This document shows positions 3,001-59,036 of a stretch of DNA of 64,000 nucleotides, one piece after another. The DNA comes from Leucoraja erinacea (taxonomy: Eukaryota). Numbering within the stretch: position 1 is the first letter of the stretch; the number at the start of each line of letters is the position of its first letter. Made by a program: the position numbers and the translations under genes. The notes beneath the pieces are model-generated. The model was given only the letters and a program-made list of their open reading frames with translations, searched no databases and was not told where the DNA came from. Where the stretch lies: assembly GCF_028641065.1 (NCBI RefSeq), contig NC_073400.1:31930001-31994000 (forward strand), given 5' to 3'.

Positions 3001-6000
3001 ACTGAAGCCAATTAACCTACAAACCCACACATATTTGGAGTGTGGGAGGAATCAAGAGCACCTGAGGTCACAGGGAGAACGTACAAACTCCGTACAGACA
3101 GCATCCATGGTCAGGATCGATCCCGCGTCTCTGGTGCTGTGGGGCAGCAACTCTACCGCTGCGCCACCGTGTCAACCAAGAGTGGGGAAGAAACCTTTTA
3201 ATCCCCACTCAAAATGGTGCTTGGTTCAAACTTTATTAAATTCTTAATTTCTGAATTCTTAAAATCTTTTGTGAAAATCTGTCCTTGGTGATCTTAACAA
3301 TAAGGTTACATTTATTGGATACATTTTCAAGTCATAGAGTTATGCAGCGTGGAAACAGACTTTTTGACCCAACCTGCCCACACCGACCAATATGTCCCAT
3401 CTACACTAGTCCCACAAAGTGCTGGAGTAACTCAGCGGGTCAGGCAGCATCTGTGGAGAACATGGATAGGTGACGTTTCACAGAGTGCTGGAGAACTCAG
3501 CGGGTCAGGCAGCATCTGTGGAGATAAAGGATAGGTTTGGCCTGCGTTTGGCCCATTTATTTTAAAGAAACTCATAGTGAGATGTACTTGGCCTAACCTG
3601 AGCCAGGACAGTGTAGAGATGCTTGTCAACGGGAGGACTTCCTCGAGATCCAGGATATTCCCAGTCGATGTCCAGACCGTCAAAGCCGTACCCTCTCAGG
3701 AAGGCGATGACTGACTTGATGAAGATTTGCCGAGTTCCTGATGAGGCGACCATCGCGGTGAATCTGCAGGAGGGATGGATGTGGGGAGAGGAGTTAGAAA
3801 TGAAATGTGCCGGAGACACAAGGAACTGTAGTAACGGCCGCTGTACTCAGTGACCCAGTGAATCTGCTGTTATATCCTATCGTGTACAGATTCACCCTCG
3901 CCTTCATTGAATGTTCGTGGTTAAAAAATTACTCCTTTCTCCTGCTATTATCCGAAGTTTCAAGTGAAATTATTATTTCTGAAAATGACATTTAGTTCAG
4001 AGATACGGCGTGGAAACATGCCCTTCGGCCCCCCCAGTCTGCACCGACCAGCGATCCCCGCTCACTAACACTATCCTACACACACAAGGGACAATTTACA
4101 TTTATAACAAGCCAGTTAACCTACAAATTTGTACGTCTTTGGAGTGTGGGAGCAAACTGAAGATCTTTAAGAAAACCCAGGAGGTCACAGGGAGAACGTA
4201 CAAACTCCGTACAGACAGCACCCGTAGTCAGGATCGAACCTGGGTCTCTGGTGCTGTAAGCGCAATAAGGCAGCAACTCTACCGCTGTGCCACACACTAT
4301 TGAAAGGATTCTTTCGTAAAATTACAATTATTTTACTTTTTGGCAAGCAATATCCTATATTGTTCAAATTACAATTTGCAAACTGCTCTGTTTAATAATA
4401 CTCCTGAAACAGTTCACTGCAAACTTATCCCCTCGATATTTATCTCTGTGTATATCATTACAGGATGTTTAGCCACTAAAAAACTGAAATAGGCAGGCAA
4501 AAAGGCATAATAAAACTACAAAGAAGGCACGTAAAAGGCATTTATTGACATAAAAAGGCATGTATTTCCACCACCAAAATATGGTTAAAAATGATAATAT
4601 AAAGTTATAGTACATTAAATGACCAAAGTTGCCTGGTTGCACATAATTACTAGCATTTTTTCAAATTATCTGGTGTTAAACTATGCCGTCTGTCAGACAG
4701 AATATTCTTCAGTTGTGAAAAACTTATTTGTACCCCAGCTGAGGTCACTGGTGCATACCAGAAACAAGCTACAGACTCTATTTTCACGTCGATACCTTGT
4801 GCATTACAATTACCTTTGAGAACTTTAGCTATGTTTTGTATTTCTTCATGATCTTTGTTAGCTAAAATCACTCTCTCATAATTTCCTTGTATGTCTTTAC
4901 CTACATCGCCACATTTACGAATATCGTCAGTTACTTTGTGGAAAACCTGCAAGTTATTCACTAACGTTTCACCACCTTTCTCAAGGGAAGTGGTAGCTTG
5001 TGGGAAGTTTGCAAAATTGGAAGCAATGAATAGATGTTGGGGAAGACTGAACCAGCGGGCAGCGGCATGAAGGACAGTGGCGCCCCCAGTTTCATCCCGG
5101 AGGTGAAAATCTTCTTGTAATTTATACTATGTTAACACTTTAATAATAACATTAATATTAACGTGTTAATATAGAAAATGTTATTGTAATCATGGTACTA
5201 GACAAAATTGCATGACCTTTTAGCAAAACAGCAAAGAAAAGGCTGATTTAGCCACTAGATCGTGAAAAAGGCATCTTGGTAAAATCATCAAAAAAAGCAT
5301 GAAACGGCACATGCCATTTATGTCAAAATTACCAAACACACCCACTGTTTACGTTGGGCACATCGAACTGCAGGTGCTGGTTTACAAAAAGAAAAGACAC
5401 AAAGTGCTGGAGTAAAACAGAGGGTCAGGCAGCATCTCTAGAGAACATGGATAGGTGACGATTCTGGTCAAGATCCTTCTTCAGGCTGAGTTACTGAGGA
5501 GTTACTCCAGCACTTTGTGTCTTTCAATATTAATTCCATATCACAGTCAATTGGAAAATAACTTTTTTTAATCTAATGCTAATGTAAAAGTTTCCATCTT
5601 ACTTCTGGGTGCCAAAGTTCCAGCCTCCAATGGACAGCAGAGTCTTGAGGTTTGAATTCCTTAAAAAAAATAGACAAAATGTGGTTTTAGAATGATGTTT
5701 AGAACAACAAAACATTTTCAGAACTGCTCAGGAACTTCTGGATCTTCTGTTTTTTTTCGCCCCTTTGGTGTTACGTTTAGTTGAGGGGATTTGCCTTAGT
5801 CTGGATCTCAAGGGGGTCACAGAAAATGAGGTGCAAGTTTATGCAACAAGGCTTCATAAGCAATGGGCCAGTCTCACTATGTGGGCTGAAGGGCCTATTT
5901 CCTCAATCTATGACAATGATTCTGTTGGCCTGTCCAATAGCTTTCTCCTGAATATCCCCCTAAACCAAGTCACCTTTCAGACAGGGGAGGTGGATGAGAT

Positions 6001-9000
6001 GAGAAAACCTTCAACAAATGGATGTGTAACAGGGTCATGTCAAAGACCCTGCTGACCATTGATCACCCGTTCACACCAGTGCTATTTCATCCCACTTTCT
6101 CATCCACTCCCTATGCACTTGGGGCAAATTGTAGAGGCCAATTCATCTAGAAACCCTTTGGAATGTGGGAGAAAACCGGTAATCCAGAGAAAATCCTCAC
6201 TGTCTTATGGCAAACGTGCAAACTCCACACAAACAGTGCCCGAGGTCAGGAACGAACCCAGGTCTCTGGCGCAGTGAGGCAGTGGCTCTACCCGCTGCGA
6301 CACTGTGCCACCCAGTACATACAGCAGGTGGATTCTTGCCACATACGCTTCCAAACGACTTGTTCACTTAGATCGACCATTTCGAAGAGTGAAATGGAAT
6401 GTTCATTAAACACTGGATGTCCCTTCGCTTGCAGCAAGCACCAGGGAATATTCGTGTTAACCCAATATTAACCCAATCAGACCCAAATCAGCAGGGTTCC
6501 TCTCCACCCATTTGTCTCCACCAAGCTGTCTCTGAGAAGTTAGGCATCACCTTGGTACTTAAAGTCTAAATAACCTATACGGTGGGCTTATCCCACTGAA
6601 CCATCCTCTCACCAACTAGAGAGCAGCCCTGGCCTCCCATCTACCTCATTGGAGACCCTCGGACTATATTTAATCAGACGTCATTGGACTTTATCTTGCA
6701 CTAAACATTATACCCTTGATCCTGTGTCTGTACAGTGTGGACGGCCTGATTGTAACCATGTACAGTCTTTCCGCCGACTAGTCAGCACGCAACAAAAAGC
6801 TTTTTGTTGTACCATGGTACACGTGACAATAATAAACTAAACTAAATTAACTGTGGAATATGGGTTATGGAATATGGATTTGGGGAATATCCAATACAGT
6901 GACTGGTTAGCAAGCAACAAAAACGTTTCACTGTATCAGTACAGGTGACAATGAACTAAACTGGACAATGTAAACATCGCAACATTGCCCGGCATTTGAG
7001 AAACAAGGTTAAGCCCGTCCCACTTTCCCAAGTTACTCACGAATTCTCCCGAGTTTTCCCCTTGATTCAAACTCGGAGATGCCAGCCGTTGGTATTTGGG
7101 GATATTTTTGTTTACTCGTGGACATTTTTCAACATGCTGAAGAAACGTCCCGACTTACCTGATGCCCCGGGTACCTACGGCTCTACGGACTCGCTACGGA
7201 CATTGTCTGAGTTTGAATCAACGGGGCAAACTCGGGAGAATTCGTGAGTAACTCGGGAAAGTGGGACAGAGGCGTTAGTATTTATTCAGCAACTGTACTT
7301 GTTCTTCAGGCTGTTGATCTCCTGGTAGAGTTTTGGGTCGTTCCATTCGTAGGTGGCGATCTGATTGCTCTTCATTCCAGCGAAGGCGTAGATGATGTGC
7401 GTGCAGAGGCAAGGGTCCACGCTCTGGGGCATGTATTTACCCTCTCCTGGTCTGTACTGTGCCCAGTTGGTGAAGTAACACACCAGCCTGTAGGCAGAGC
7501 CTGGGCAAGGGAGAGACAGGGTGGTCAGGACAATGTGTCTGTGGCAATCACACAAAGCAAAGCAAAGCAAGGCTGCAAATGCACAAAGACTCACCCAGTT
7601 GCAGGCAGGCCAGTAAAACCACCGCTGGAACAGAAAACAGAGAACAGCGTGTTAGGATTATGACAAACCGTAATAAACCAGGTGTTACGGGGAGAAGACA
7701 GGAGAATGGGGTTGAGAGAGAAAGGTAGATCAGCCATGATTGTGTGGCTAGAGTGCACTTGATGGGCCGAATGGCCTAATTCTGCTCCTAGCACGTATGA
7801 AATTATGAAACCTTGGCTGTATTACGGTCTCTACACAATGACACTGTTATGTAAGTGGTTGGGAAACTATGAAGATCTATCTTGTGGGCGGCACAGTGGA
7901 GCAGTGGCAGAGTTGCTGCCTCACAGCGCCAGAGACCCAGGTTCGATCTTGACTATGGGTGTTGAACGTGTGTGGAATTTGTACATCAACCCTGTTATGC
8001 TTACTATTAGAAACATAGAAACATAGAAATTAGGTGCAGGAGTAGGCCATTCGGCCCTTCGAGCCTGCACCGCCATTCAATATGATCATGGCTGATCATC
8101 CAACTCAGTATCCCGTACCTGCCTTCTCTCCATACTCCCTGATCCCCTTAGCCACAAGGGCCACATCTAACTCCCTCTTAAATATAGCCAATGAACTGGC
8201 CTCAACTACCTTCTGTGGCAGAGAGTTCCAGAGATTCACCACTCTCTGTGTGAAAAAAGTTCTTCTCATCTCGGTTTTAAAGGATTTCCCCCTTATCCTT
8301 AATATTCTAGTATAAATTTGATTGTTCTGTTTCTGGTACATATGACAATAACACTCTTAACTCCCTCCCCCTGTGACCAAGTGGGTTTTCTCCAGTAGCT
8401 CTGGTTTCCTCCCAAATCCCAAAGATGTGAAGGATTGAAGGTTAATTGTCCCTCTGTAAAATTGCTCCTCGTGTGGAGGGAGTCGTTGCATAAGTGGGAT
8501 AACATGGGAATAGTGTGAAAGGCTGAACAATGGTCGGCATGAACTCTGTGGGCCGAAGGGCCTTGTTTCCATACTGTATCTCTAAACTAAACCTTTCCTA
8601 TCCATGTACTCATCCAAATATCTGTTAAATGTTATTATACTTGCCTCATCTGCCTCCTCTGGCAGATCGTTCCATATACTCACCACCCTCTGGGCAACAG
8701 GTTAGAGTCATAGTCACACAGCGCAGAAACAGGCCCTTTGGCCCAATTTGTCCATGCTGACCAAGATGCCCCATCTAAGCCTGTCCCAGTGGCCCCTGGA
8801 TTCACCTTTAAAGCTTTACCCTCTCACATTCAGTGTCAATGCCCTGTAGTTTTAGACTCCCCTTCCCTGGAGATAGGCAGAGACCATCCTTCATATCTCT
8901 GCCCCTCATGATTTTCTAAATGTCTCTGAAGATTTTCACAGAGAGCTGGAGTAATTCAGCAGGTCAGACAACTTCTCCGGAGAGAAGGAATGGGTGACGT

Positions 9001-9848
9001 TTCGGGTCCGTTGGAAAATACAAAATATTAAGAAACTACAAACTGCAGAAGTTGATTTACACCAAAGATAGACACAGAGTGCTGGAGTATCACAGCGGGT
9101 CAGGCAGCATCTGTGGAGAACATGGATAGGTGACGTTTCACAGAGTGCTGGAGTAACTCAGCGGGTCAGGCAGCATTTATGGAGCTAAGGAAATAGGCAA
9201 CGTTTCGGGTCGAAACCCTTCCGGGTTTCGGCCCGAAACGTTGCCTATTTCCAGAAGGGTTTCTGCCCAAAACGTTGCCTATTTCCTTAGCTCCATAGAT
9301 GCTGCTGCACCATAACTCAGTGGGCCAGGCAGCATCTGTGGAGAACATGGATTGGTGTCGTGACACAGAGTGCTGGAGTAACTCAGCGGGTCAGGCAGCA
9401 TCTGTGGAGAAAATGGATAGGTGACGTTTCACAGAGTGCTGGAGTAACTCAGCGGGTCAGGCAGCATCTGTGGAGAACATGGATAGGTGACGTTTCACAG
9501 AGTGCTGGAGTATCACAGCGGGTCAGGCAGCATCTGTGGAGAACATGGATAGGTGACATTTCACAAAGTGCTGGAGTAACTCAGCGGGTCAGGCAGCATC
9601 TGTGGAGAACATGGATAGGTGACGTTTCACAAAGTGCTGGAGTATCACAGCGGGTCAGGCAGCATCTCTGGAGATTAAGGTTAGATAGAGTCGAGACCAT
9701 TCAGACACCTTATAATAAAACGTGAGAAACAATTTAACCTGTTCTCATCAATTAATGTCTAAACCTGATTCTTTGAAAAAGTATTCCAATATCAAAAGGA
9801 ATTAAACAACAAAAGGTTCTTACCTGTTCCAAGAAGTAGCTTTGCCAT
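1..9848 (-). CDS. CHIA: GH18 chitinase, acidic mammalian chitinase/chitotriosidase-like, copy 1 (3' end outside window)
   Basis: GT-AG exons 9848-9824, 7624-7595, 7500-7299, 5659-5603, 3763-3598, 2734-2610, 1713-1587, 904-722, 31-<1 join in frame: [37 protein letters not shown]...[12 protein letters not shown]...NVMTYDF...[16 protein letters not shown]. Exon sizes 25/30/202/57/166/125 match vertebrate CHIA/CHIT1 structure and the catalytic DxxDxDxE motif is intact. CHIA versus CHIT1 orthology is not resolved. Confidence 0.93.
722..904 (-). CDS. CHIA: chitinase copy 1 exon 8
   Basis: 183 nt, [28 protein letters not shown]...GFLAYYE. Confidence 0.94.
950..1480 (-). mobile_element. Rex1/Babar-type LINE 3' fragment in chitinase intron 7
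   Basis: Degenerate [17 protein letters not shown]...[20 protein letters not shown]. Confidence 0.7.
1587..1713 (-). CDS. CHIA: chitinase copy 1 exon 7
   Basis: 127 nt, [42 protein letters not shown], donor GTAAGT. Confidence 0.93.
1780..2460 (-). mobile_element. CR1-type LINE 3' fragments
   Basis: [25 protein letters not shown]...[21 protein letters not shown]. Confidence 0.7.
2610..2734 (-). CDS. CHIA: chitinase copy 1 exon 6
   Basis: 125 nt, [41 protein letters not shown]. Confidence 0.92.
2880..3172 (-). mobile_element. tRNA-derived SINE (HE1-like); related copies near 3990-4295, 6060-6310, 7889-7960 (+), 15675-16060, 23740-24010 and their duplicates
   Basis: Head ggtggcgcagcggtagagttgctgcc with a B-box-like ggatcgatcc; CR1-like 3' tail ending in (ctaaa)n. 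Confidence 0.65.
3598..3763 (-). CDS. CHIA: chitinase copy 1 exon 5 (catalytic)
   Basis: 166 nt, [44 protein letters not shown]. Confidence 0.95.
4300..5330 (-). mobile_element. degenerate hAT-like DNA transposon relic (second copy about 35800-36820)
   Basis: AT-rich block; ORF 4650-4961 ends [34 protein letters not shown], resembling the hAT C-terminal dimerisation motif PxTSxxxERxFS...RR.L...NL. Confidence 0.55.
5603..5659 (-). CDS. CHIA: chitinase copy 1 exon 4
   Basis: 57 nt, [18 protein letters not shown] (GH18 SxGG motif), donor GTAAGA. Confidence 0.93.
7013..7272. mobile_element. MITE with long terminal inverted repeats (second copy about 38497-38756; related termini at 23566 and 63820)
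   Basis: gtcccactttcccaagttactcacgaattctcccgagttt ... aaactcgggagaattcgtgagtaactcgggaaagtgggac; TTA/TAA-like flanks suggest PIF/Harbinger. Confidence 0.7.
7299..7500 (-). CDS. CHIA: chitinase copy 1 exon 3
   Basis: 202 nt, [42 protein letters not shown]...LKN. Confidence 0.95.
7595..7624 (-). CDS. CHIA: chitinase copy 1 exon 2 (signal peptide [10 protein letters not shown])
   Basis: 30 nt, ttccag acceptor, GTGAGT donor, phase 1/1. Confidence 0.88.
8010..8302 (-). mobile_element. CR1 LINE 3' end with (tttctatg)n tail
   Basis: [38 protein letters not shown]; same family as 24973-26775. Confidence 0.8.
9074..9672. repeat. 66-bp tandem repeat derived from a Penelope-like 3' terminus (expanded copy about 40558-41515)
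   Basis: Unit cacagagtgctggagtaactcagcgggtcaggcagcatctgtggagaacatggataggtgacgttt, with an internal inverted block at about 9168-9310. Confidence 0.85.
9824..9848 (-). CDS. CHIA: chitinase copy 1 coding exon 1 (MAKLLLGT)
   Basis: ATG at 9848, 25 nt, donor GTAAGA; TATA box just upstream. Confidence 0.88.
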
Positions 9849-9883
9849 CTTGTTACTGTTGCTGACTAGACCTGAGCTGCCTC

Positions 9884-10006
9884 TTTTATACAATGAGCTT
9901 ATCACGAACAATAATCCAATGTGTTTGTCGTTCCCTTTATCAGAGTGAAAGGGCAGTCACGATGATCCTCCTGCTATTTACAAAGGGAAAATAATAGTTC
10001 TTATCT
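9884..10006 (-). promoter_or_regulatory. chitinase proximal promoter: TATAAAA plus three GATA sites
   Basis: TATAAAA at 9890-9884; GATAA-type sites at 9898-9903, 9936-9941 and 10000-10005; all retained in copy 2 (TATA 41732-41726). Confidence 0.7.
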
Positions 10007-10109
10007 TGACTTCAATATTTTCTCTTCAATAATACCTCGTCCCCTGTTCAATGTCATTCAGATTGTTCACCTTCATTTTCACCTCTCTGTTTCTGAGCTT
10101 GATTGGAAA

Positions 10110-11190
10110 TGACTTGGAAACGTAGAATCATGGAAAGTAGGCGCAGGAGTAGGGCATTTAGCCAGCACCGCCATTCAATTATGATCATAGCTATTTGTCC
10201 ACAATTAGTACCCTGTTCCTGCTTTCTCCCCATATCCCTTGATTCCATTAGCCCTATGAGCTAACTCTCTCTTGAAAACATCCAGTGAATTGGCCTCCAC
10301 TGCCTTCTGAGGCATAGAATTCCACAGATTCATAACTCTGGGTGAAAATGTTTTTCCTCATTTCAGTCCTAAATGACCTACCCTTTATTCTTAAACTGTG
10401 ACCCGTGGTTCTGGATTCCCCCAACATCGGGGACATTTTTTCTGCATCTTGCCTGTCCAATCCCTTAAGAATTTTGTATGTTTCTGTAAGATCCCCTCTC
10501 ATTCTTCTGAATTCCAGTGAATATCAGCCCAGTCGACCCATTCTTTCATCATATGACAGTCTCGCCATCCCAGGAATTAACCTGGTGAACCTACGCTGCA
10601 TTCCCTCAATAGCAAGAATGCCCTTCCTCAAATTACAAGATCAAAACTGCTGGTGTGGTCTTACCATGGCCCTATACAACTGCAGTAGGACCTCCTTGCC
10701 CCGCTTCACAAATCCTCTCACTATGAAGGCCAACATGCCATTTGCTTTCTTCACTGCCTGCTGTACCTGCATGTTTATTTTTAGTGACTGGTGTACAAGC
10801 ACACCGAGGTCTCATTGCATATTCCCTTTTCCTAATCTGACAACATTCAGATAATAATCTACATTCTCCCCATAAGCTCTGACACCTGTACAAATCAACA
10901 ATCTATCCATCTCTGCATTAAAAATATCCGTCGACTTGGCCTCCACAGACAGCCTTCCATGGGAATGAATTCCACAGATTCACCACATTCTTACTAAAGA
11001 AATTCCTCTTCATCTCCTTCTTAAACGACCACCCTTTAATTCTGAGGCTGTGACCTCTTGTCCGAGACTCCCCCACTAGTGGATTACATGCAGGCTGAAG
11101 AGATTAGTTTAACTTCTTGGCATCATGGTCAACACGGACATTGTGGGCCGAAGGGCCTGTACCTGTGCTGCACTATTCCATGTTCTATGT
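10110..11190 (-). mobile_element. CR1 LINE fragments between the two divergent promoters (copy about 41950-43030)
   Basis: RGDLTETYKILKGLDR, QVQQAVKKANGMLAFI. Confidence 0.75.
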
Positions 11191-11225
11191 TACATCGTCT
11201 TCTCAATTACAGTGGAGCGGGTAGG

Positions 11226-11568
11226 TGACCAGAACGAGACGTGGTGGAGACACAAGCAGGATGTGTGGGGCGCCTGGTTGGCCGCTGGCAGCTGGGATGA
11301 CGTTGTTCTTGTTAAACGTTAACGGCTGATGCAACGACACGTTTGGCAGAGGGTGGAGAGGTCGCGGCTGACTCCGGCCAATGCTCCGTGGGAGGCAGTG
11401 ATTGGTTGAATGTACGTGAGGGCAGACAATGAGGGGCAGGAGAAGCCGGGAGTCGGTATAAAAGGAGCGAGCGATGGCAGGAGATGAGAACAAGACCGAC
11501 CCCGTCACCCTGTGTGGAGACTCCGGAGCTGGTAACCAACCCTGTGGATCCTTCAAGTGTCTGTGAGT
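11226..11568 (+). promoter_or_regulatory. V-gene promoter and non-coding exon 1 (copy A): C/EBP-ATF site, CCAAT, ERSE, TATA
   Basis: TGATGCAAC 11327-11335; CCAAT 11378-11382; CGTGG-N9-ATTGG 11387-11405; TACGTG 11413-11418; TATAAAA 11457-11463; candidate donors GTAACC 11532 and GTGAGT 11563; acceptor ends at 12108. Confidence 0.75.
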
Positions 11569-12112
11569 GATGGGGGTGGGATTGTCTCTGTTCACTGTTC
11601 CCCCAGTTCAGAAGCCTGATAGCAGAGGGGAAGAAGCTGTTCCTGAGTCTGGTGGTGCGCGCTTTCAAGCTTCTGTACCTTCTGCTAGACAGGACCAGGG
11701 AGAAGGAGGAATGACCGGGGTGGGACAAGTGATGGAGTCATAGAGTCACAGCGAGACCTTCGGCCCAACTTGCCCGCGCCCACCAACGTGTCCCCATCAA
11801 TACTAGACCCATCTGCCTGCGTTTGGCCCTTACCCCTCTAATCCTGTCCTATCAATGTACCTGTCTAACTGTTTCTTAATCATTGTGATAGTACCTGCCT
11901 CAACTACCTCTTCCGGCAGCTCGTTCCAAACACCCTCCACCCTTTGTGTAAAAAAGTCACCCCTCAGTTTTCCATGAAATCTTTCCCCCCCCCCTCGCCT
12001 TAAACCGATGTCCTCTGGTTCTCGATTCCCCAACTCTGGGCGGGTTCAGGGAATGCCATCATGAATCCTACTGAGTTGCAATAAGGTGACCCATTGTTTC
12101 ACCCACAGGAAC

Positions 12113-12687
12113 ATGGGACTGCAGAGATGGATAGGATTCATGGTCCTTGTGGAGATGGTGTGGCAAGTCTCCGCAACTGGAACAGGTCCGATCTCCAGAG
12201 AATGGGGAGAGGAAGCAAACTTGGCCGGGCGGAACGCACGGTCGTATTGGCATGTCAACAATGAACAGCTTCCAAGATGCACGGACAAGCCAGACTCTGC
12301 TGGTGATCACCCTTTAATCATTAGTCTGCAGGTTGCCGTTGTGTCTCCGAGTGGTTCTATTACGCTGCCCTGTAAACTATCCAAGAATTACAGTAAACCT
12401 ACCCTCGTCACATGGAAAAAAGACGGTGTGTTGCCATTGCAACATATCACAGTTGGTTTTCAGTGGGGTATAAGGGATCGTATCCCCGCTGGAAGTTCGT
12501 GAATAACAATATATTGAAACATCGGGACGCCTCGTTGGTCCTGTGGGGGGTACAAGAGAAAGATGCCGGGACATATACCTGCATTTGGTCCACTTCTCAT
12601 CATGGGAAATGTCATGTATTGACATGGCTGAAAATAGAGAGAAACCTCCCAATGATTCACCACGCACTCCCCCCAATCCCACACTGA
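12113..12687 (+). pseudogene. secreted single V-set Ig domain gene, copy A, frameshifted
   Basis: Matches the intact copy at 43955-44527 except for an extra TG near 12428 (gacggtgTGttgcc), giving an early stop at 12502. Confidence 0.75.
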
Positions 12688-12773
12688 CCTTTCTGTCCTG
12701 GGCCGCCTCCACTGTCAGAGTGAGGCCAAGTGCAAATTGGAGGGATAGCACTCAAATTTCACTTGGGCAGCTT

Positions 12774-15180
12774 ATTCAGATTCAGATTCAGATTCAAACA
12801 TTATTGTCATTGTGCAGTGTACAGTACAGAGACAACAAAATGCAGTTAGCATCTCCCTAGAAGAGCGACATAGAATATGAGCAATAAATAAATATACGTG
12901 CATACAGTCGTAGTAGTGCAATTTTTATCTGGTGGATGAGTGTCCGGGGGCAATCACCGAGGTACAGTGTTGAGTAATGTAACAGCCGCAGGGAAGAAGC
13001 TGATCCTGGACTGCTGGTTCAGCAATGGAGAGACCAGTAGCGCCTCCCGCACGGGAGGAGGGTAAACAGTCTATGGTTGGGATGTTAAACTGAGTTCTTC
13101 TGTCAATCTAAAGTCAACTTGACTCAAACACTTGTTGCTGTTAAAATCAATTCTTTATTCAACTGAGACTAGTCTCTTGAACCTTCCAACACAGAGCTGT
13201 TGCTCTGGGGCGGGTCCAGAGAGGAGTAACTTTGATACAAACTCATGGCATTTATATAGGTATTAGACATTTCAGATACAGAGGGTATGACAAGCTAGTA
13301 ACCAATCATCTGAGTCCTTTTTACAATCTTCGTTTGTCTATGGTATAACTTTATAACTTTGTTTCAGAATTATTTTATTTCAACACAGCAAAACCCCAGT
13401 AGGCTCTTATCAAGGACCACTCCTCAAAATATAAGATACAGACAATGATCACACAAGTCATACACACTTTCTATACCAAGAAGAAAGATATTTCTATAAA
13501 TCTAAACAATTTCTATGTCTAAAGTGTACATTTCTACTAAGGCAATACATTTCATAATTTGTTTTACTACAATTTCACAGTTTGAAATACTTTTACCTAG
13601 GTCTTTAAAACATTAATTATATAAGTTTGCTGAATTACAGTTTCTAAGTTCAAAACCTATACCCATCCCAACCAAGGATACATGGGTCGTAAATCTGTCA
13701 ACTTACTTAATTAGTGTTTGATTCCAGGATACAGCTTCATTCACTTAACTTACATACTTCATACAGCTTAACTTACAGCCTCCCCTTCTCCTGCTATCTC
13801 TGGGAGCTGGATTTCCAATCTCTCTACAAGGCCTTTTACAAATATTACAAATGATCTTCTTCTCCAAGCAACGACTCCCCTTCACATACATCCTAATTCA
13901 ACATAGCCAAAGCTAACTACAGGGCCTATTATCTCTCAGCCCTGAACTATATCTCAAACTCAGCTCAAAGCTCAGTTTGACTCACAGCTCAAGAATGTCC
14001 ACAAAGAAAAGTGAATCTGACCTAAGAAGAGGCCCTTATTCAGTTATCTATTTTCCAACACAATCATACCAAGTACAATTTCCTCCAGTGTTATAATTGC
14101 CTCAGCAATAAACCTAAGCTAAACAGGTTCAGGTTCAGGCCTCAATGTTTTGATTCATCTTTGCCTGTGTGTATCTGTCTGGACTTTATTTCGCCAGGAA
14201 AACCCTAAGCTTTTCTTTTGCAAATTACCTAGCTTATATAAAAATCACTATCCAAACGGTTCTATTTATATAATATTTCCTCAGGGGTGAGAGCAGTCCT
14301 CGACGATGCTGAGTGCCCTTTGCAGACATTGCTTGCTCTGGACAGACTCAATGGAGGGGAGGGAGGAACCGGTGATGCGTCGGGCAATTTTCAACACCCT
14401 CTGCAGTGCTTTCTGGTCGGAGACAGAGCAGTTGCCGTACCATACTGTGATAAAGTTGGTAACCATGCTCTCGATGGTGCAGCGGTAGAAGTTCACCAGA
14501 ATCTGAGGAGACAGATGGACCTTCTTCAGTCTCCTCAGGGAGAAGAGACGCTGATGAGCCTTCTTGACCAGAGTTGAGGTATTGTGGGTCCAAGAGAGGT
14601 CATCGGAGATGTTGACCCCCAGAAACCTGAAGCTGGAAACACGTTCCACCTCCGGCCCGTTAATGTGGATGGGGGTGTGCGTGCCGCCCCTAGACTTCCT
14701 GAAGTCTACAATGAGCTCCTTGGTCTTCTTGGAGTTAAGGGCCAGGTTGTTGTCAGCGCACCATGCTGCTAGGAGCTGGACCTCCTCCCTGTAGGCCGAC
14801 TCGTCGTTGTTGCTGATGAGGCCAATCACCGTTGTATCATCTGCATACTTGACGATGGTGTTAGTACCATGTACAGGTGTGCAGTCGTAGGTGAAGAGGG
14901 AGTAGAGGAGGGGGCTCAGCACACAGCCCTGTGGAACGCCGGTGTTCAGGGTGAGAGTTGAAGAGGTGTGCTTGTCTAACCTCACAGACTGGGGTCTGTT
15001 GGCTAGAAAGTCCAATATCCAGTTGCAGAGGGAGGGGTCAATGCCCAGGTTACCGAGTTTGGTGATCAGTTTAGAGGGCATAATGGTGTTGAATGCTGAG
15101 CTGTAATCGATGAACAGCATTCTTATGTAAGTGTCTCTGTTGTCGAGGTGGGAGAGGGCGGAGTGAAGTGCCGGAGTGAA
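12774..15180 (-). mobile_element. 5'-truncated Rex1/Babar LINE split by a solo LTR (copy about 44614-47010)
   Basis: RT ORF 14281-15120 ([27 protein letters not shown]); 3' part 12774-13082 with (tctgaa)n tail. Confidence 0.88.
13083..14283 (-). mobile_element. 1.2-kb solo LTR (ERV-like); copy 44921-46114
   Basis: TG...CA ends; 4-bp flanks ggga/gggg; minus-strand order CCAAT box 13302, TATATAAA 13258-13251, AATAAA 13159-13154, terminal AACA. Confidence 0.8.
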
Positions 15181-16363: not shown

Positions 16364-17545
16364 GATTCAGATTCAGATTCAGATTCAATTTTCATTGTCA
16401 TTGTCAGTGTACAGTACAGAGACAACGAAATGCATTTAGCATCTCCCTTGAAGAGCGACATAGCAAACGATTTGAATTAAAAAAAAAAAAATAATAAGTG
16501 GGGGGTGATTGGCAGTCACCGAGGTACGTTGTTGAGTAGAGTGACAGCCGCCGGAAAGAAGCTGTTCCTCGACCTGCTGGTTCGGCAACGGAGAGACCTG
16601 TAGCGCCTCCCGGATGGTAGGAGGGTAAACAGTCCATGGTTGGGGTGAGAGCAGTCCTTGGCGATGCTGAGCGCCCTCCGCAGACAGCGCTTGCTTTGAA
16701 CAGACTCAATGGAGGGGAGCGTGGAACCGGTGATGCGTTGGGCAATTTTCACCACCCTCTGCAATGCCTTCCGGTCGGAGACAGAGCAGTTGCCATACCA
16801 TACTGTGATGCAGTTGGTAAGGATGCTCTCGATGGTGCAGCGGTAGAAGTTCACCAGGATCTGAGGAGACAGATGGACCTTCTTCAGTCTCCTCAGGAAG
16901 AAGAGACGCTGATGAGCCTTCTTGATCAGAATAGAGGTATTGTGGGTCCAAGAGAGGTCATCGGAGATGTTGACTCCCAGGAACCTGAAGCTAGAAACAC
17001 GTTCCACCTCCGTCCCGTTAATGTGGATGGGGGTGTGCGTGCCACCTCTGGACTTCCTGAAGTCTACAATGAGCTCCTTGGTCTTCTTGGAGTTAAGGGC
17101 CAGGTTGTTGTCAGCGCACCATGCTGCTAAGTGCTGGACCTCCTCCCTGTAGGCCAGCTCATCGTTGTTGCTGATGAGGCCAATCACCGTTGTATCATCT
17201 GCATACTTGATGATGGTGTTAGTACCATGTACAGGTGTGCAGTCATAGGTGAAGAGGGAGTAGAGGAGGGGGCTCAGCACACAGCCCTGAGGAACGCCGG
17301 TGTTCAGGGTGAGGGTTGAAGAGGTGTGCTTGTCTAACCTCACAGACTGGGGTCTGTTGGTTAGAAAGTCCAGTATCCAGTTGCAGAGGGAGGGGTCGAT
17401 GCCCAGGTTACCGAGTTTGGTGATCAGTTTTGATGGAATAATGGTGTTGAATGCTGAGCTGTAATCGATGAACAGCATTCTTACATAAGTGTCTCTGTTG
17501 TCAAGGTGGGAGAGGGCGGAGTGAAGTGCCGTTGAGATGGCATCT
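16364..17545 (-). mobile_element. 5'-truncated young Rex1/Babar LINE (copy 48113-49280 has a premature stop)
   Basis: Open 320-aa RT C-terminal ORF 16516-17478; (tctgaa)n tail; empty site visible near 24310. Confidence 0.92.
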
Positions 17546-21174: not shown

Positions 21175-21517
21175 TGACCAGAACGAGACGTGGTGGAGAC
21201 ACAAGCAGGATGTGTGGGGCGCCTGGTTGGCCGCTGGCAGCTGGGATGACGTTGTTCTTGTTAAACGTTAACGGCTGATGCAACGACACGTTTGGCAGAG
21301 GGTGGAGAGGTCGCGGCTGACTCCGGCCAATGCTCCGTGAGAGGCAGTGATTGGTTGAATGTACGTGAGGGCAGACAATGAGGGGCAGGAGAAGCCGGGA
21401 GTCGGTATAAAAGGAGCGAGCGATGGCAGGAGATGAGAACAAGACCGACCCCGTCACCCTGTGTGGAGACTCCGGAGCTGGTAACCAACCCTGTGGATCC
21501 TTCAAGTGTCTGTGAGT
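21175..21517 (+). promoter_or_regulatory. V-gene promoter/exon 1, copy B (ERSE variant)
   Basis: Same block as 11226-11568; ERSE reads CGTGA-N9-ATTGG at 21336-21354. Confidence 0.7.
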
Positions 21518-22060: not shown

Positions 22061-22600
22061 ATGGGACTGCAGAGATGGATAGGATTCATGGTCCTTGTGG
22101 AGATGGTGTGGCAAGTCTCCGCAACTGGAACAGGTCCGATCTCCAGAGAATGGGGAGAGGAAGCAAACTTGGCCGGGCGGAACGCACGGGCCCCTCGACA
22201 AGTCACCAATGAACAGCTTCCAAGATGCACGAACGAGTCAGATTCTGATGCCATCAGTCATCACCCATCACCGATTAACAAGAAGGTGCTCGTTGCATCT
22301 CTGGGTGGTTCTGTTACGTTGCCATGTAATTTATCCAACGTTTACAATTATCTCAGGTTTGTTGAATGGAAAAAAGATGGTGTTCAAATTGCCAGTTTCC
22401 AAGAGAGAACGTATGCGCATTATATGGGGTCTGATGTTCACTGGAAGTTCGTGCATCACGACGTCTATACGACTAGGGACGCCACGTTGCTCCTGACAGG
22501 TGTAAAAGAGGAAGATACAGGGACGTATTCCTGTGTTTGGCTCAAGTATCGTCAGAAACCGGTTTGTGAATTATTGATGCAGCTGATGATCTCTCACTGA
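22061..22600 (+). CDS. secreted single V-set Ig domain protein, copy B (179 aa)
   Basis: Acceptor cccacag|GAAC ATG; signal peptide MGLQRWIGFMVLVEMVWQVSA; GGSVTLPC...W...DATLLLTGVKEEDTGTYSC; 68 aa between canonical Cys; stop right after G strand; no TM. Confidence 0.85.
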   Translation: MGLQRWIGFMVLVEMVWQVSATGTGPISREWGEEANLAGRNARAPRQVTNEQLPRCTNESDSDAISHHPSPINKKVLVASLGGSVTLPCNLSNVYNYLRFVEWKKDGVQIASFQERTYAHYMGSDVHWKFVHHDVYTTRDATLLLTGVKEEDTGTYSCVWLKYRQKPVCELLMQLMISH

Positions 22601-28973: not shown

Positions 28974-29316
28974 TGACCAGAACGAGACGTGGTGGAGACA
29001 CAAGCAGGATGTGTGGGGCGCCTGGTTGGCCGCTGGCAGCTGGGATGACGTTGTTCTTGTTAAACGTTAACGGCTGATGCAACGACACGTTTGGCAGAGG
29101 GTGGAGAGGTCGCGGCTGACTCCGGCCAATGCTCCGTGGGAGGCAGTGATTGGTTGAATGTACGTGAGGGCAGACAATGAGGGGCAGGAGAAGCCGGGAG
29201 TCGGTATAAAAGGAGCGAGCGATGGCAGGAGATGAGAACAAGACCGACCCCGTCACCCTGTGTGGAGACTCCGGAGCTGGTAACCAACCCTGTGGATCCT
29301 TCAAGTGTCTGTGAGT
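28974..29316 (+). promoter_or_regulatory. V-gene promoter/exon 1, copy C
   Basis: Intact ERSE 29135-29153, TATA about 29205. Confidence 0.72.
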
Positions 29317-29857: not shown

Positions 29858-30397
29858 ATGGGGCTGCAGAGCTGGATAGGATTCATGGTCCTTGTGGAGA
29901 TGGTGTGGCAAGTCTCCGCAACTGGAACAGGTCCGATCTCCAGAGAATGGGGAGAGGAAGCAAACTTGGCCGGGCGGAACGCACGGGCCCCTCGACAAGT
30001 CACCAATGAACAGCTTCCAAGATGCACGGACAAGTCAGATTCTGATGCCATCAGTCATCACCCATCACCGATTAACAAGAAGGTGCTCGTTGCATCTCTG
30101 GGCGGTTCTGTTACGTTGCCATGTAATATATCCAACCTTAAAAATCATCACAGGTTTGTTGAATGGATAAAAGATGGTGTTGAAATTGCCCATTTCCATG
30201 AGAGAGCGTATGCACATTATACGGGATCTGATGTTCACTGGAAGTTCGTGCATCACGACGTCTATATGACTCAGGACGCCACGTTGCTCCTGACAGGTGT
30301 AAAAGAGGAAGATAAAGGGTCGTATTCCTGTGTTTGGTCCGTGTATAGAGATAGACCGTTTTGTGAATTATTGATGCAGCTGGTGATCTCTCACTGA
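29858..30397 (+). CDS. secreted single V-set Ig domain protein, copy C (179 aa)
   Basis: Same architecture as copy B; intact ORF; DKGSYSC motif. Confidence 0.85.
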   Translation: MGLQSWIGFMVLVEMVWQVSATGTGPISREWGEEANLAGRNARAPRQVTNEQLPRCTDKSDSDAISHHPSPINKKVLVASLGGSVTLPCNISNLKNHHRFVEWIKDGVEIAHFHERAYAHYTGSDVHWKFVHHDVYMTQDATLLLTGVKEEDKGSYSCVWSVYRDRPFCELLMQLVISH

Positions 30398-33655: not shown

Positions 33656-33939
33656 TGACCAGAACGAGACGTGGTGGAGAGGACACAAGCAGGATGTGTG
33701 GGGCGGCCTGGTTGGCCGCTGGCAGCTGGGATGACGTTGTTCTTGTTAAACGTTAACGGCTGATGCAACGACACGTTTTGGCAGAGGGTGGAGAGGTCGC
33801 GGCTGACTCCGGCAATGCTCCCGTGGGAGGCAGTGATTGGTTGAATGTACGTGAGGGCAGACAATGAGGGGCAGGAGAAGCGGGGAGTCGGTATAAAAGG
33901 ATGCGAGCGATGGCAGGAGATGAGAACAAGACCCGACCC
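33656..33939 (+). promoter_or_regulatory. V-gene promoter cut by the assembly gap
   Basis: ERSE 33822-33840 and TATA about 33892; many 1-nt indels consistent with a low-quality contig end. Confidence 0.6.
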
Positions 33940-34039
33940 NNNNNNNNNNNNNNNNNNNNNNNNNNNNNNNNNNNNNNNNNNNNNNNNNNNNNNNNNNNNN
34001 NNNNNNNNNNNNNNNNNNNNNNNNNNNNNNNNNNNNNNN
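33940..34039. other. assembly gap (100 N)
   Basis: Run of N. Confidence 1.
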
Positions 34040-41690: not shown

Positions 41691-43069
41691 CTTGTTACTG
41701 TTGCTGACTAGACCTGAGCTGCCTCTTTTATACAATGAGCTTATCACGAACAATAGTCCAATGTGTTTGTCGTTCGCTTTATCAGAGTGAAAGGGCAGTC
41801 ACGATGATCCTCCTGCTATTTACAAAGGGAAAATAATAGTTCTTATCTTGACTTCAATATTTTCTCTTCAATAATACCTCGTCCCCTGTTCAATGTCATT
41901 CAGATTGTTCACCTTCATTTTCACCTCTCTGTTTCTGAGCTTGATTGGAAATGACTTGGAAACGTAGAATCATGGAAAGTAGGCGCAGGAGTAGGGCATT
42001 TAGCCAGCACCGCCATTCAATTATGATCATAGCTATTTGTCCACAATTAGTACCCTGTTCCTGCTTTCTCCCCATATCCCTTGATTCCATTAGCCCTATG
42101 AGCTAACTCTCTCTTGAAAACATCCAGTGAATTGGCCTCCACTGCCTTCTGAGGCATAGAATTCCACAGATTCATAACTCTGGGTGAAAATGTTTTTCCT
42201 CATTTCAGTCCTAAATGACCTACCCTTTATTCTTAAACTGTGGCCCCTGATTCTGGATTCCCCCAACATCGGGGACATTTTTTCTGCATCTTGCCTGTCC
42301 AAATCCCTTAAGAATTTGTATGTTTCTGTAAGATCCCCTCTCATTCTTCTGAATTCCAGTGAATATCAGCCCAGTCGACCCATTCTTTCATCATATGACA
42401 GTCTCGCCATCCCAGGAATTAACCTGGTGAACCTACGCTGCATTCCCTCAATAGCAAGAATGCCCTTCCTCAAATTACAAGATCAAAACTGCTGGTGTGG
42501 TCTTACCATGGCCCTATATAACTGCAGTAGGACCTCCTTGCCCCGCTTCACAAATCCTCTCACTATGAAGGCCAACATGCCATTTGCTTTCTTCACTGCC
42601 TGCTGTACCTGCATGTTTATTTTTAGTGACTGGTGTACAAGCACACCGAGGTCTCATTGCATATTCCCTTTTCCTAATCTGACAACATTCAGATAATAAT
42701 CTACATTCTCCCCATAAGCTCTGACACCTGTACAAATCAACAATCTATCCATCTCTGCATTAAAAATATCCGTCGACTTGGCCTCCACAGACAGCCTTCC
42801 ATGGCAATGAATTCCACAGATTCACCACATTCTTACTAAAGAAATTCCTCTTCATCTCCTTCTTAAACGACCACCCTTTAATTCTGAGGCTGTGACCTCT
42901 TGTCCGAGACTCCCCCACTAGTGGATTACATGCAGGCTGAAGAGATTAGTTTAACTTCTTGGCATCATGGTCAACACGGACATTGTGGGCCGAAGGGCCT
43001 GTACCTGTGCTGCACTATTCCATGTTCTATGTTACATCGTCTTCTCAATTACAGTGGAGCGGGTAGGTG

Positions 43070-43410
43070 GCCAGAACGAGACGTGGTGGAGACACAAGCA
43101 GGATGTGTGGGGCGCCTGGTTGGCCGCTGGCAGCTGGGATGATGTTGTTCTTGTTAAACGTTAACGGCTGATGCAACGACACGTTTGGCAGAGGGTGGAG
43201 AGGTCGCGGCTGACTCCGGCCAATGCTCCGTGGGAGGCAGTGATTGGTTGAATGTACGTGAGGGCAGACAATGAGGGGCAGGAGAAGCCGGGAGTCGGTA
43301 TAAAAGGAGCGAGCGATGGCAGGAGATGAGAACAAGACCGACCCCGTCACCCTGTGTGGAGACTCCGGAGCTGGTAACCAACCCTGTGGATCCTTCAAGT
43401 GTCTGTGAGT
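43070..43410 (+). promoter_or_regulatory. V-gene promoter/exon 1, copy A'
   Basis: Intact ERSE 43229-43247, TATA about 43299. Confidence 0.72.
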
Positions 43411-43954
43411 GATGGGGGTGGGATTGTCTCTGTTCACTGTTCCCCCAGTTCAGAAGCCTGATAGCAGAGGGGAAGAAGCTGTTCCTGAGTCTGGTGGTGC
43501 GCGCTTTCAAGCTTCTGTACCATCTGCTAGACAGGACCAGGGAGAAGGAGGAATGACCGGGGTGGGACAAGTGATGGAGTCATAGAGTCACAGCGAGACC
43601 TTCGGCCCAACTTGCCCGCGCCCACCAACTTGTCCCCATCAATACTAGACCCATCTGCCTGCGTTTGGCCCTTACCCCTCTAATCCTGTCCTATCAATGT
43701 ACCTGTCTAACTGTTTCTTAATCATTGTGATAGTACCTGCCTCAACTACCTCTTCCGGCAGCTCGTTCCAAACACCCTCTACCCTTTGTGTAAAAAAGTC
43801 ACCCCTCAGTTTTCCATGAAATCTTTCCCCCCCCCCTCGCCTTAAACCGATGTCCTCTGGTTCTCGATTCCCCAACTCTGGGCGGGTTCAGGGAATGCCA
43901 TCATGAATCCTACTGAGTTGCAATAAGGTGACCCATTGTTTCACCCACAGGAAC

Positions 43955-53588: not shown

Positions 53589-53931
53589 TGACCAGAACGA
53601 GACGTGGTGGAGACACAAGCAGGATGTGTGGGGCGCCTGGTTGGCCGCTGGCAGCTGGGATGACGTTGTTCTTGTTAAACGTTAACGGCTGATGCAACGA
53701 CACGTTTGGCAGAGGGTGGAGAGGTCGCGGCTGACTCCGGCCAATGCTCCGTGGGAGGCAGTGATTGGTTGAATGTACGTGAGGGCAGACAATGAGGGGC
53801 AGGAGAAGCCGGGAGTCGGTATAAAAGGAGCGAGCGATGGCAGGAGATGAGAACAAGACCGACCCCGTCACCCTGTGTGGAGACTCCGGAGCTGGTAACC
53901 AACCCTGTGGATCCTTCAAGTGTCTGTGAGT
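53589..53931 (+). promoter_or_regulatory. V-gene promoter/exon 1, copy D
   Basis: Intact ERSE 53750-53768, TATA about 53820. Confidence 0.72.
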
Positions 53932-58601: not shown

Positions 58602-59036
58602 TGACCAGAACGAGACGTGGTGGAGACACAAGCAGGATGTGTGGGGCGCCTGGTTGGCCGCTGGCAGCTGGGATGACGTTGTTCTTGTTAAACGTTAACG
58701 GCTGATGCAACGACACGTTTGGCAGAGGGTGGAGAGGTCGCGGCTGACTCCGGCCAATGCTCCGTGGGAGGCAGTGATTGGTTGAATGTACGTGAGGGCA
58801 GACAATGAGGGGCAGGAGAAGCCGGGAGTCGGTATAAAAGGAGCGAGCGATGGCAGGAGATGAGAACAAGACCGACCCCGTCACCCTGTGTGGAGACTCC
58901 GGAGCTGGTAACCAACCCTGTGGATCCTTCAAGTGTCTGTGAGTGATGGGGGTGGGATTGTCTCTGTTCACTGTTCCCCCAGTTCAGAAGCCTGATAGCA
59001 GAGGGGAAGAAGCTGTTCCTGAGTCTGGTGGTGCGC
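58602..59036 (+). promoter_or_regulatory. orphan V-gene promoter/exon 1 with truncated intron
   Basis: Intact ERSE 58763-58781 and TATA; intron is fused to Gypsy internal sequence at 59036/59037; no V exon follows in the window. Confidence 0.68.

What the first reader, a model, noticed from the sequence alone, without database searches (positions are those of the whole stretch)
11238..11463. V-gene promoters carry a clustered unfolded-protein/integrated-stress-response cassette
Seen: a perfect ERSE on the minus strand (CCAAT-cactgcctc-CCACG, 11405-11387), a second opposed CCAAT (11378), a C/EBP-ATF composite site TGATGCAAC (11327), ACGT-core sites GACGTGG (11238) and GATGACGT (11296), TACGTG (11413) and TATAAAA (11457), all within about 230 CpG-rich bp and repeated in seven copies. 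Known: ERSE binds NF-Y with ATF6/XBP1, TGATGxAAx binds ATF4, and RCGTG binds HIF. ERSE plus a C/EBP-ATF site is the layout of DDIT3/CHOP and HERPUD1 promoters. Inference: these genes respond to ER or nutrient stress, are driven by XBP1/ATF6 in professional secretory cells, or captured the promoter of a UPR gene.
Basis: partly seen in the sequence, partly recalled or inferred. Interest (0 to 1): 0.82.

Follow-up and report, generated by a model that had tools for sequence, protein, structure and literature searches.

The report
Shared promoter of skate V-domain genes
This 226-base stretch is the small shared promoter of a little-skate family of secreted single-V-domain proteins; its stress-response-like motifs are really there, but the seven copies count as one observation and nothing yet shows that ER stress controls these genes.

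Summary
The perfect ERSE (CCAAT-N9-CCACG) occurs only inside the repeated block, in 6 of 7 copies; the seventh has a G>A change in CCACG.

The window is Leucoraja erinacea. The genes are LOC129708937/39-type secreted proteins with one nectin/PVR-like V-set domain. They are not rearranging Ig/TCR V segments.

The stretch lies in a roughly 260-bp CpG-rich block. This block starts sharply at 11226 between repeat-derived flanks and ends at a TATA box. An exon 1, a 546-bp intron and a leader/V exon follow.

The seven copies are not independent. Promoter, exon 1, intron 1 and leader differ by about 0-1.7%, while synonymous sites of the mature V domain differ by 0.65-0.69 per site. That pattern indicates gene conversion.

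The block also holds an equally improbable HNF1-type palindrome next to the C/EBP-ATF site, so motif reading alone does not single out a stress programme. There is no perfect UPRE.

Three RNA runs gave essentially no reads, so neither TSS nor tissue was obtained. The block is not a high-copy transposon, and no donor gene was found.

Stress control is possible (about 0.25) but untested. The scan noted the same promoter before, 21 kb upstream (s1-876378).

The parts
11226..11486 (+). Shared proximal promoter block, reference copy. Homology among all copies begins sharply at about 11226. CpG o/e 0.95.
   Evidence: an X4 genomic contig diverges exactly upstream of 11226
11238..11244 (+). GACGTGG. 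This is a UPRE-like core with one mismatch to TGACGTGG (it reads AGACGTGG).
11296..11303 (+). GATGACGT, a CRE half-site with an ACGT core. It is mutated to GATGATGT in copy 43229.
11311..11323 (+). GTTAAACGTTAAC, an HNF1-type palindrome (11 of 13 matches to GTTAATNATTAAC). It is present in 7 of 7 blocks and nowhere else in the window.
   Evidence: consensus from PMC11476927
11326..11335 (+). CTGATGCAAC, a C/EBP-ATF composite (CARE) and a perfect match to the ATF4 10-mer MTGAYGCAAY. Present in 7 of 7 blocks.
   Evidence: motif as used in PMC10700025
11378..11382 (+). Plus-strand CCAAT box, at about -109 from the predicted TSS.
11387..11405 (-). Perfect ERSE-I, CCAATCACTGCCTCCCACG. Its CCAAT has NF-Y-favourable flanks (AACCAATCA).
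11413..11418 (+). TACGTG (RCGTG core). It is not informative: three or more RCGTG occur in 28% of random blocks.
11457..11463 (+). TATAAAA box. It predicts a TSS near 11487.
   Evidence: inference from usual TATA-to-TSS spacing
11474..11562 (+). Exon 1 as used by NCBI's models. ATG at 11474 (MAGDENKTDPV...), GTGAGT donor at 11563. It reads in frame into exon 2. The ATG lies only 11 nt after the TATA box, so whether it is in the mRNA is open.
11563..12108 (+). Intron 1. Its middle is made of high-copy repeat fragments, yet it is 98.3-99.5% identical among copies.
12109..12502 (+). Exon 2 of the reference copy: leader MGLQRWIGF... at 12113, an invariant pro-like part and a V-set domain. This copy has 2 extra bases near 12427 and a premature stop at 12502; the twin at 43955-44527 is intact.
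21175..21435 (+). Promoter copy 2. Its ERSE is broken (CGTGAG). The ORF at 22061-22600 is intact.
28974..29234 (+). Promoter copy 3. Its gene at 29858-30397 is LOC129708939 (P0001).
33656..33939 (+). Promoter copy 4. It runs into the assembly gap at 33940-34039, has several 1-bp indels, and has lost the plus-strand CCAAT.
43068..43328 (+). Promoter copy 5, the twin of copy 1 within a 31.8-kb segmental duplication. It reads GATGATGT. Its gene at 43955-44527 is LOC129708937 (P0003).
53589..53849 (+). Promoter copy 6. The ORF at 54476-55015 is intact.
58602..58862 (+). Promoter copy 7. It is 100% identical to copy 1 over 435 bp (to 59036), after which the intron is unrelated. Exon 2 is not in the window.

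Best explanation
The stretch is the compact proximal promoter, about 260 bp long, shared by a tandem array of little-skate genes. These genes encode small secreted proteins: a signal peptide, an invariant pro-like segment and one nectin/PVR-like V-set domain.

What is shown:
- The block begins abruptly at 11226 between unrelated repeat-derived flanks.
- It is CpG-rich.
- It holds an inverted pair of CCAAT boxes at about -109 and -82 and a TATA box at -30 relative to the predicted start.
- It is followed by an exon 1 that splices to the leader/V exon.
- Promoter, exon 1, intron 1 and leader are kept near-identical among paralogues, while the mature V domain has diverged to saturation at silent sites. 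The 5' kilobase has therefore been homogenised by gene conversion, and the seven copies amount to one observation.

What is inferred:
- NF-Y on the CCAAT boxes together with TBP on the TATA box forms the basal machinery.
- Activity is tissue-restricted or inducible, because three unrelated transcriptomes are essentially silent.
- That activity is supplied by bZIP factors on the TGATGCAAC and ACGT-core sites (the C/EBP-ATF-CREB3/ATF6/XBP1 class), and possibly by HNF1 on the adjacent GTTAA-N3-TTAAC palindrome.
- The CCACG half of the ERSE may recruit ATF6/XBP1-type factors, but that step is unproven. The sequence fits a liver/gut or acute-phase type of secretory-protein promoter just as well.
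For: - Motifs and geometry.
- Gene identity and exon 1 to exon 2 reading. P0003 and P0001 are identical to window ORFs and start at the ATG at 11474.
- V-set and nectin/PVR likeness, with no octamer and no RSS.
- Sharp 5' boundary and repeat flanks.
- CpG o/e 0.95 against 0.51.
- Homogenisation: intron 1 differs 0.5-1.7% and promoter plus exon 1 0-0.9%, against dS 0.65-0.69 in the mature V domain. The leader is invariant among L. erinacea paralogues but differs in the Rhinoraja orthologue.
- Variable sites: 3 in 337 bp of promoter plus exon 1, against 15 in 546 bp of intron. This suggests mild extra constraint on the promoter.
- Silence in three RNA runs from three studies, with 8.7-14.9 million reads laid each.
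Against: - No TSS was obtained.
- NCBI's models start translation at 11474, only 11 nt after the TATA box. If that ATG is in the mRNA, transcription starts upstream of where the TATA box would place it, and the geometry given here shifts.
- No binding, expression or cross-species data are available.
- The ERSE and CARE together are improbable by chance (3.5e-5 per block), which argues that the stress reading deserves more weight than a generic promoter model gives it.
- The HNF1-like site deviates from the consensus at two inner positions.
Confidence: 0.55

Rival explanations
1. The promoter is a true UPR/ISR cassette. NF-Y with ATF6/XBP1 on the ERSE, and ATF4-C/EBP on TGATGCAAC, make the V-domain genes inducible by ER or nutrient stress, or tie them to the physiological UPR of professional secretory cells.
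For: - A perfect ERSE at -100 to -82 with an optimal NF-Y flank, and a perfect ATF4/CARE 10-mer.
- Joint chance of 3.5e-5 per block.
- Two further near-UPRE ACGT cores.
- ERSE, ERSE-II, UPRE and CARE definitions match the literature (PMC8301375; PMC5588925).
- The products are secretory.
- There are precedents for ER-stress transducers driving secreted immune or acute-phase genes: CREBH (PMC5588925) and XBP1s on Il6/Tnf (PMC8301375).
Against: - The seven copies are one homogenised sequence.
- The ERSE is broken in copy 21336 and the ACGT core in copy 43229, both with intact ORFs.
- There is no perfect UPRE.
- Canonical ERSE genes are broadly expressed ER machinery, whereas this family is silent in three transcriptomes and encodes cargo.
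- A genome-wide screen found 535 perfect ERSE-I in human, most beside genes with no known UPR role (PMC5890977).
- An equally rare HNF1-type match in the same block shows how readily a theme can be read into it.
Confidence: 0.25
2. A liver/gut or acute-phase type secretory-protein promoter. HNF1 on GTTAAACGTTAAC, C/EBP on the adjacent TGATGCAAC, NF-Y on the CCAAT boxes and a TATA box form an albumin-like layout that gives hepatocyte or gut-epithelial expression. The CCACG next to the CCAAT would then be incidental.
For: - The GTTAA-N3-TTAAC palindrome is in 7 of 7 blocks and nowhere else (0.07 expected per 64 kb).
- It lies 3 bp upstream of the C/EBP-type site.
- The HNF1 consensus is GTTAATNATTAAC (PMC11476927).
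- A GH18 chitinase gene is the immediate neighbour in two copies, and that is compatible with a gut or stomach expression domain.
- The albumin-type layout itself rests on my own knowledge, not on a test made here.
Against: - Two inner positions differ from the HNF1 consensus.
- There are no expression data.
- The chitinase start lies 3.6 kb away and is absent from five of the seven copies.
- The same non-independence of copies applies.
Confidence: 0.25
3. The block, with exon 1, was captured from a UPR gene and placed in front of a V-domain exon.
For: - Sharp homology boundary at 11226 with repeat-derived flanks.
- Exon 1 carries an open frame unrelated to the Ig domain.
Against: - The exon-1 peptide is found only in this family among proteins of 121-387 aa.
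- No other copy of the block lies in the window outside the array.
- The genome could not be searched.
Confidence: 0.04
4. The block is part of a transposon or other high-copy repeat, and the motifs are passengers.
For: The flanks on both sides and the middle of the intron are repeat fragments.
Against: - RNA reads from repeats pile up on 10961-11204, 11571-11692, 11815-11936 and 11998-12058, but depth is exactly zero across 11205-11570.
- The contig run X4 shows depth of about 9.6 on the block against thousands on the repeats.
- There is no Rfam family match.
Confidence: 0.03

Closest known systems
ERSE-I-bearing promoters of UPR genes (HSPA5, HSP90B1, CALR, DDIT3, XBP1)
   Same: A perfect CCAAT-N9-CCACG within about 100 bp of the predicted start, with an NF-Y-favourable CCAAT. 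The consensus definitions are from PMC8301375.
   Different: The gene product is secreted cargo, not ER machinery. There is a single ERSE and no perfect UPRE or ERSE-II. The element is lost in one intact paralogue. No basal expression was seen in three transcriptomes. Inducibility is untested.
CREBH (CREB3L3)/ATF6-driven acute-phase genes
   Same: They show that an ER-membrane bZIP factor can drive secreted innate-immune proteins (PMC5588925). ACGT-core and C/EBP-type sites are present here.
   Different: There is no evidence of hepatic or inflammatory expression. CREB3L3 binding was not tested, and the skate orthologue was not examined.
Albumin-type liver/gut promoters (HNF1 + C/EBP + NF-Y + TATA)
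   Same: The same set of element types within about 200 bp, with an HNF1-like palindrome directly beside a C/EBP-type site.
   Different: The HNF1 match is 11 of 13. In albumin the HNF1 site is the most proximal element; here it lies at -176. The tissue is unknown.
Multigene effector families with a frozen 5' region and a hypervariable mature part (conotoxins, some defensins)
   Same: Promoter, leader and pro-region are near-identical, while the mature domain is highly diverged, with dN/dS 1.4-1.9 between close paralogues.
   Different: Here the neutral intron is frozen as well, which points to gene conversion rather than only selection. The fold is an Ig V-set domain.
Ig/TCR V gene segment promoters
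   Same: A TATA box upstream of a leader-plus-V coding unit, in tandem arrays.
   Different: There is no octamer in the blocks and no RSS. Leader and V lie in one exon that ends in a stop codon. The nearest solved relatives are nectin-2/PVR V domains.

Membership tests
Functional ERSE-I | Sequence CCAAT-N9-CCACG | tested here: met
   Perfect in 6 of 7 copies. Copy 21336 has CTCACG.
Functional ERSE-I | Lies in the proximal promoter of the regulated gene | tested here: inconclusive
   -100 to -82 from a TSS predicted only from the TATA box. RNA runs gave no reads. NCBI's CDS starts at 11474.
Functional ERSE-I | ER-stress induction that depends on the element, with NF-Y-dependent ATF6 or XBP1s binding to CCACG | not testable with these tools
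   Needs reporter, ChIP or stress RNA-seq experiments.
Functional ERSE-I | Retained in diverged orthologous or paralogous promoters | tested here: inconclusive
   Paralogues are homogenised, so they carry no information. Metagenome scans were blank.
Canonical UPR target gene | Product works in ER folding, ERAD or secretory capacity | tested here: not met
   Secreted single V-set domain protein.
UPRE | TGACGTGG/A | tested here: not met
   No match in any block; the only window hit is at 62329. The block has AGACGTGG and GATGACGTT.
ERSE-II | ATTGG-N-CCACG | tested here: not met
   Zero matches in the block.
CARE / ATF4 site | TGATGNAAN, or MTGAYGCAAY | tested here: met
   CTGATGCAAC in 7 of 7 blocks.
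CARE / ATF4 site | ATF4-dependent induction on amino-acid limitation or eIF2alpha phosphorylation | not testable with these tools
   Experiment needed.
HNF1 site | GTTAATNATTAAC palindrome | tested here: inconclusive
   Half-sites and spacing are exact (GTTAA-N3-TTAAC), but two inner positions differ.
CpG-island-like promoter | GC above 50%, CpG o/e above 0.6, length above 200 bp | tested here: met
   GC 58%, o/e 0.95 over 261 bp. It is short for an island.
Rearranging Ig/TCR V segment | RSS after the V exon, an octamer in the promoter, and a split leader | tested here: not met
   No RSS and no octamer in the blocks. Leader and V form one ORF that ends in a stop.
High-copy transposon | Many dispersed copies, with repeat-type read pile-ups | tested here: not met
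   Zero RNA-read depth on 11205-11570 while the flanks pile up. X4 depth is about 9.6 against thousands on the flanks.

The most novel reading that the evidence does not exclude
An ER-stress transducer of the ATF6/XBP1/CREB3L class, acting through the ERSE and the ACGT-core/CARE sites, drives a whole gene-converted array of hypervariable secreted V-domain effectors in a cartilaginous fish. Secretory or ER stress would then be wired directly to output of an innate recognition repertoire, an early-vertebrate counterpart of the CREBH acute-phase link.
Probability: 0.15. Interest if true: 0.6.

Novelty: new member of a known kind. Interest (0 to 1): 0.3.

Why it matters
If the ERSE and CARE were functional, an expanding, diversifying family of secreted V-domain proteins in skates would be switched on by ER or nutrient stress or by the secretory-cell UPR. 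That is an unusual coupling of proteostasis signalling to immune-type effectors.

As it stands, the value is more modest:
- It defines a 261-bp shared promoter for an uncharacterised, lineage-restricted gene family.
- It shows that this promoter is kept uniform by gene conversion.
- It provides natural motif mutants (copy 21336 without CCACG, copy 43229 without the ACGT core). Because the V exons are distinguishable in RNA-seq, these make the stress hypothesis cheaply testable.

Tried and rejected
- Metagenome scans for relatives, one with a protein alignment and one with the promoter pattern: both blank.
- RNA evidence for the TSS or splice: the three raw-read RNA runs chosen blind (tissues coded) gave zero depth on promoter and exon 1. 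Exon 2 had only about one read pair, in X13, starting near 12108. No joint reached the listing threshold. X4 turned out to be genomic contigs.
- Donor search with the exon-1 peptide: only the family itself was found. The search is limited to proteins of 121-387 aa.
Single motifs were checked with the DNA search instead.
- Rfam: no match.

Rejected readings:
- HIF/RCGTG: expected by chance.
- A bidirectional promoter shared with the chitinase: its first coding exon is about 3.6 kb away, and it accompanies only two copies.
- An Ig-type V promoter.

Full report
**1. Observation**

Reading 10900-12300 confirms every motif at the stated coordinate:
- GACGTGG 11238
- GATGACGT 11296
- TGATGCAAC 11327
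- CCAAT 11378
- minus-strand CCAATCACTGCCTCCCACG 11405-11387
- TACGTG 11413
- TATAAAA 11457

A pattern search finds six perfect ERSEs in the window against 0.11 expected, all on the same strand and all inside a repeated block. A 46-nt probe finds a seventh copy with one change. The block is CpG-rich: GC 58% and CpG o/e 0.95, against 0.51 for the window and 0.41 for the adjacent intron.

**2. What the genes are**

Each block is followed about 650 bp downstream by an ORF. The ORF begins MGLQRWIGFMVLVEMVWQVSATG (a signal peptide), continues through an invariant pro-like stretch, and ends with one Ig V-set domain and a stop codon.

The word search returns seven proteins, six from Leucoraja erinacea and one from Rhinoraja longicauda. 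P0003 (LOC129708937) and P0001 (LOC129708939) are identical to the window's ORFs at 43955 and 29858, so the window is little skate.

NCBI's models add 31 residues (MAGDENKTDPV...) from an exon 1. That exon starts at the ATG at 11474 and ends at a GTGAGT donor at 11563. It joins the acceptor at 12108/12109 in frame.

The nearest solved relatives of the domain are the N-terminal V domains of nectin-2 and the poliovirus receptor (E = 2e-9). There is no octamer in the blocks and no RSS. 'V-gene' therefore means a secreted V-set IgSF gene here, not an antigen-receptor segment.

**3. Anatomy of the block**

Self-comparison shows that homology among copies starts sharply at about 11226. Upstream there are two unrelated classes of flank, both repeat-derived.

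Laid reads support this. Repeat-type pile-ups with loose ends cover 10961-11204, 11571-11692, 11815-11936 and 11998-12058, whereas depth is exactly zero across 11205-11570 in three RNA runs. In the contig run X4, depth is about 9.6 on the block against thousands on the repeats. One X4 contig covers 11226-11652 without a break and departs from the window exactly upstream of 11226.

The shared regulatory unit is therefore only about 260 bp, and it is not a high-copy transposon.

Relative to a TSS predicted at about 11487:
- TATA box at -30
- ERSE at -100 to -82
- second CCAAT at -109
- C/EBP-ATF site at -160
- CRE half-site at -191
- GACGTGG at -249

**4. Seven copies are one observation**

Between the copy-1/copy-5 type and copies 2, 3 and 6, divergence is as follows:
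- Mature V domain, synonymous sites: 0.65-0.69 per site
- Intron 1: 0.5-1.7%
- Promoter plus exon 1: 0-0.9%
- Leader/pro part: 0-1.5%

Copy 7 is 100% identical to copy 1 for 435 bp, and then its intron becomes unrelated. The leader is invariant among the skate's paralogues but differs at several residues in the Rhinoraja protein.

Neutral intron sequence that is 40-60 times less diverged than silent V sites means the 5' kilobase has been homogenised by gene conversion. Repetition of the motifs therefore carries no information about selection on them.

The few differences that exist do not spare the motifs. Of three substitutions in the promoter among well-assembled copies, one destroys the CCACG of the ERSE (11391 G>A, copy 21336, intact ORF). 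Another destroys the ACGT core of GATGACGT (11301 C>T, copy 43229 = LOC129708937).

The promoter plus exon 1 has fewer variable sites than the intron (3 in 337 bp against 15 in 546 bp). This fits a functional promoter in general but does not single out any motif.

**5. How improbable are the motifs?**

In 200,000 composition-matched random 261-mers:
- ERSE: 0.001
- ATF4-type 10-mer: 0.004
- TGATGNAA: 0.037
- ERSE and CARE together: 3.5e-5
- GACGTGG (0.09), TGACGT (0.14) and three RCGTG (0.28) are uninformative

This is not negligible, and it keeps the stress reading alive.

However, the same block holds GTTAAACGTTAAC. This matches the half-sites and spacing of the HNF1 palindrome GTTAATNATTAAC (PMC11476927). 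It is in 7 of 7 blocks and nowhere else, with 0.07 expected per 64 kb. It is as rare as the ERSE, lies 3 bp from the C/EBP-type site, and belongs to a quite different regulatory theme. So either the promoter integrates both inputs, or rare matches to some theme are easy to find after the fact.

Further points:
- There is no perfect UPRE (TGACGTGR) in any block and no ERSE-II.
- A published screen counted 535 perfect ERSE-I in the human genome, mostly beside genes with no known UPR role (PMC5890977).
- ATF6 binds CCACG only when NF-Y occupies the CCAAT, whereas XBP1s binds independently (PMC8301375).
- The ERSE's CCAAT here has the favourable AACCAATCA context (my own knowledge of NF-Y preferences).

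**6. Expression**

Three raw-read RNA runs from three studies, with 8.7-14.9 million reads laid each, give no reads on exon 1. On exon 2 there are none either, apart from about one pair in X13. That pair starts near 12108, which is consistent with the acceptor but far too thin to count.

Because the conserved 5' part would collect reads from all paralogues, the family is essentially silent in those samples. This is unlike canonical ERSE genes, which are broadly expressed, and it points to tissue-restricted or inducible use. No TSS could be placed.

If the TATA box is used, the ATG at 11474 lies outside the mRNA and translation starts at the signal peptide (MGLQ, good Kozak context). NCBI's longer CDS implies a start further upstream. 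The Rhinoraja model starts at MGLQ.

**7. Capture hypothesis**

The exon-1 peptide occurs only in this family among proteins of 121-387 aa. No other copy of the block is in the window, and Rfam has no match. The genome itself could not be searched. There is no support for capture, but it is not excluded.

**8. Verdict**

The best-supported reading is an ordinary kind of object: a compact NF-Y/TATA promoter with bZIP-type and HNF1-like upstream sites. It belongs to an interesting, lineage-restricted array of secreted V-domain genes whose 5' kilobase is kept uniform by gene conversion.

Control by ATF6/XBP1/ATF4 is a legitimate hypothesis (about 0.25). A liver/gut or acute-phase type logic is about as likely. 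Neither can be decided without expression, TSS, reporter or cross-species data.

Noticed in passing
window 11311-11323 (and the six equivalent positions): GTTAAACGTTAAC, an HNF1-type palindrome directly upstream of the C/EBP-ATF site. It is in 7 of 7 promoter blocks and nowhere else in 64 kb.
   Followed up: partly
window 653-7594, minus strand (twin about 31.8 kb downstream): Exons of a GH18 chitinase: signal and [16 protein letters not shown] at 7286-7594, catalytic [11 protein letters not shown] at 3562-3819, and further exons at 1566-1736 and 653-928. It lies head-to-head with V-gene copy 1, with about 3.6 kb between the first coding exon and the promoter block.
   Followed up: partly
window 9500-14500 vs 41340-46331: A segmental duplication with a period of about 31.8 kb and 98.8% identity. 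It carries the chitinase, the V gene and the repeats. V-gene copies 1 and 5 are twins.
   Followed up: partly
window ~12427: Copy 1 has two extra bases in the V exon relative to its twin at 43955-44527. This gives a frameshift and a stop at 12502. It is either a young pseudogene or an assembly error.
   Followed up: no
window 12242-12620 and equivalents: The mature V domain has dN/dS 1.4-1.9 between close paralogues (copies 2, 3 and 6) and 0.6 at saturation between distant ones. The preceding 43 leader/pro codons are almost invariant. An extra conserved Cys pair brackets the domain.
   Followed up: partly
window 11474 vs 11457: NCBI's CDS starts at an ATG only 11 nt after the TATA box. The 31-residue extension would sit in front of a normal signal peptide. 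The Rhinoraja model lacks it. The extension may be an annotation artefact.
   Followed up: partly
window 33656-33939: Promoter copy 4 carries several single-base indels, many of them in short base runs, and abuts the 100-N gap at 33940-34039. This looks like low-quality assembly rather than a diverged copy.
   Followed up: no
window 58602-59036: Copy 7 is 100% identical to copy 1 for 435 bp, and then its intron is unrelated.
   Followed up: no
window 9300-9725 and 40800-41516: A tandem array of units about 66 bp long, which reads as repeated [22 protein letters not shown] in one frame. Further scattered copies lie at 3413-3536, 5398-5464 and 34903-35026. It is a repeat-derived minisatellite.
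   Followed up: no
window 14281-15120 and 16516-17478, minus strand: Two LINE-type reverse-transcriptase ORFs ([13 protein letters not shown]...) lie between V-gene copies.
   Followed up: no
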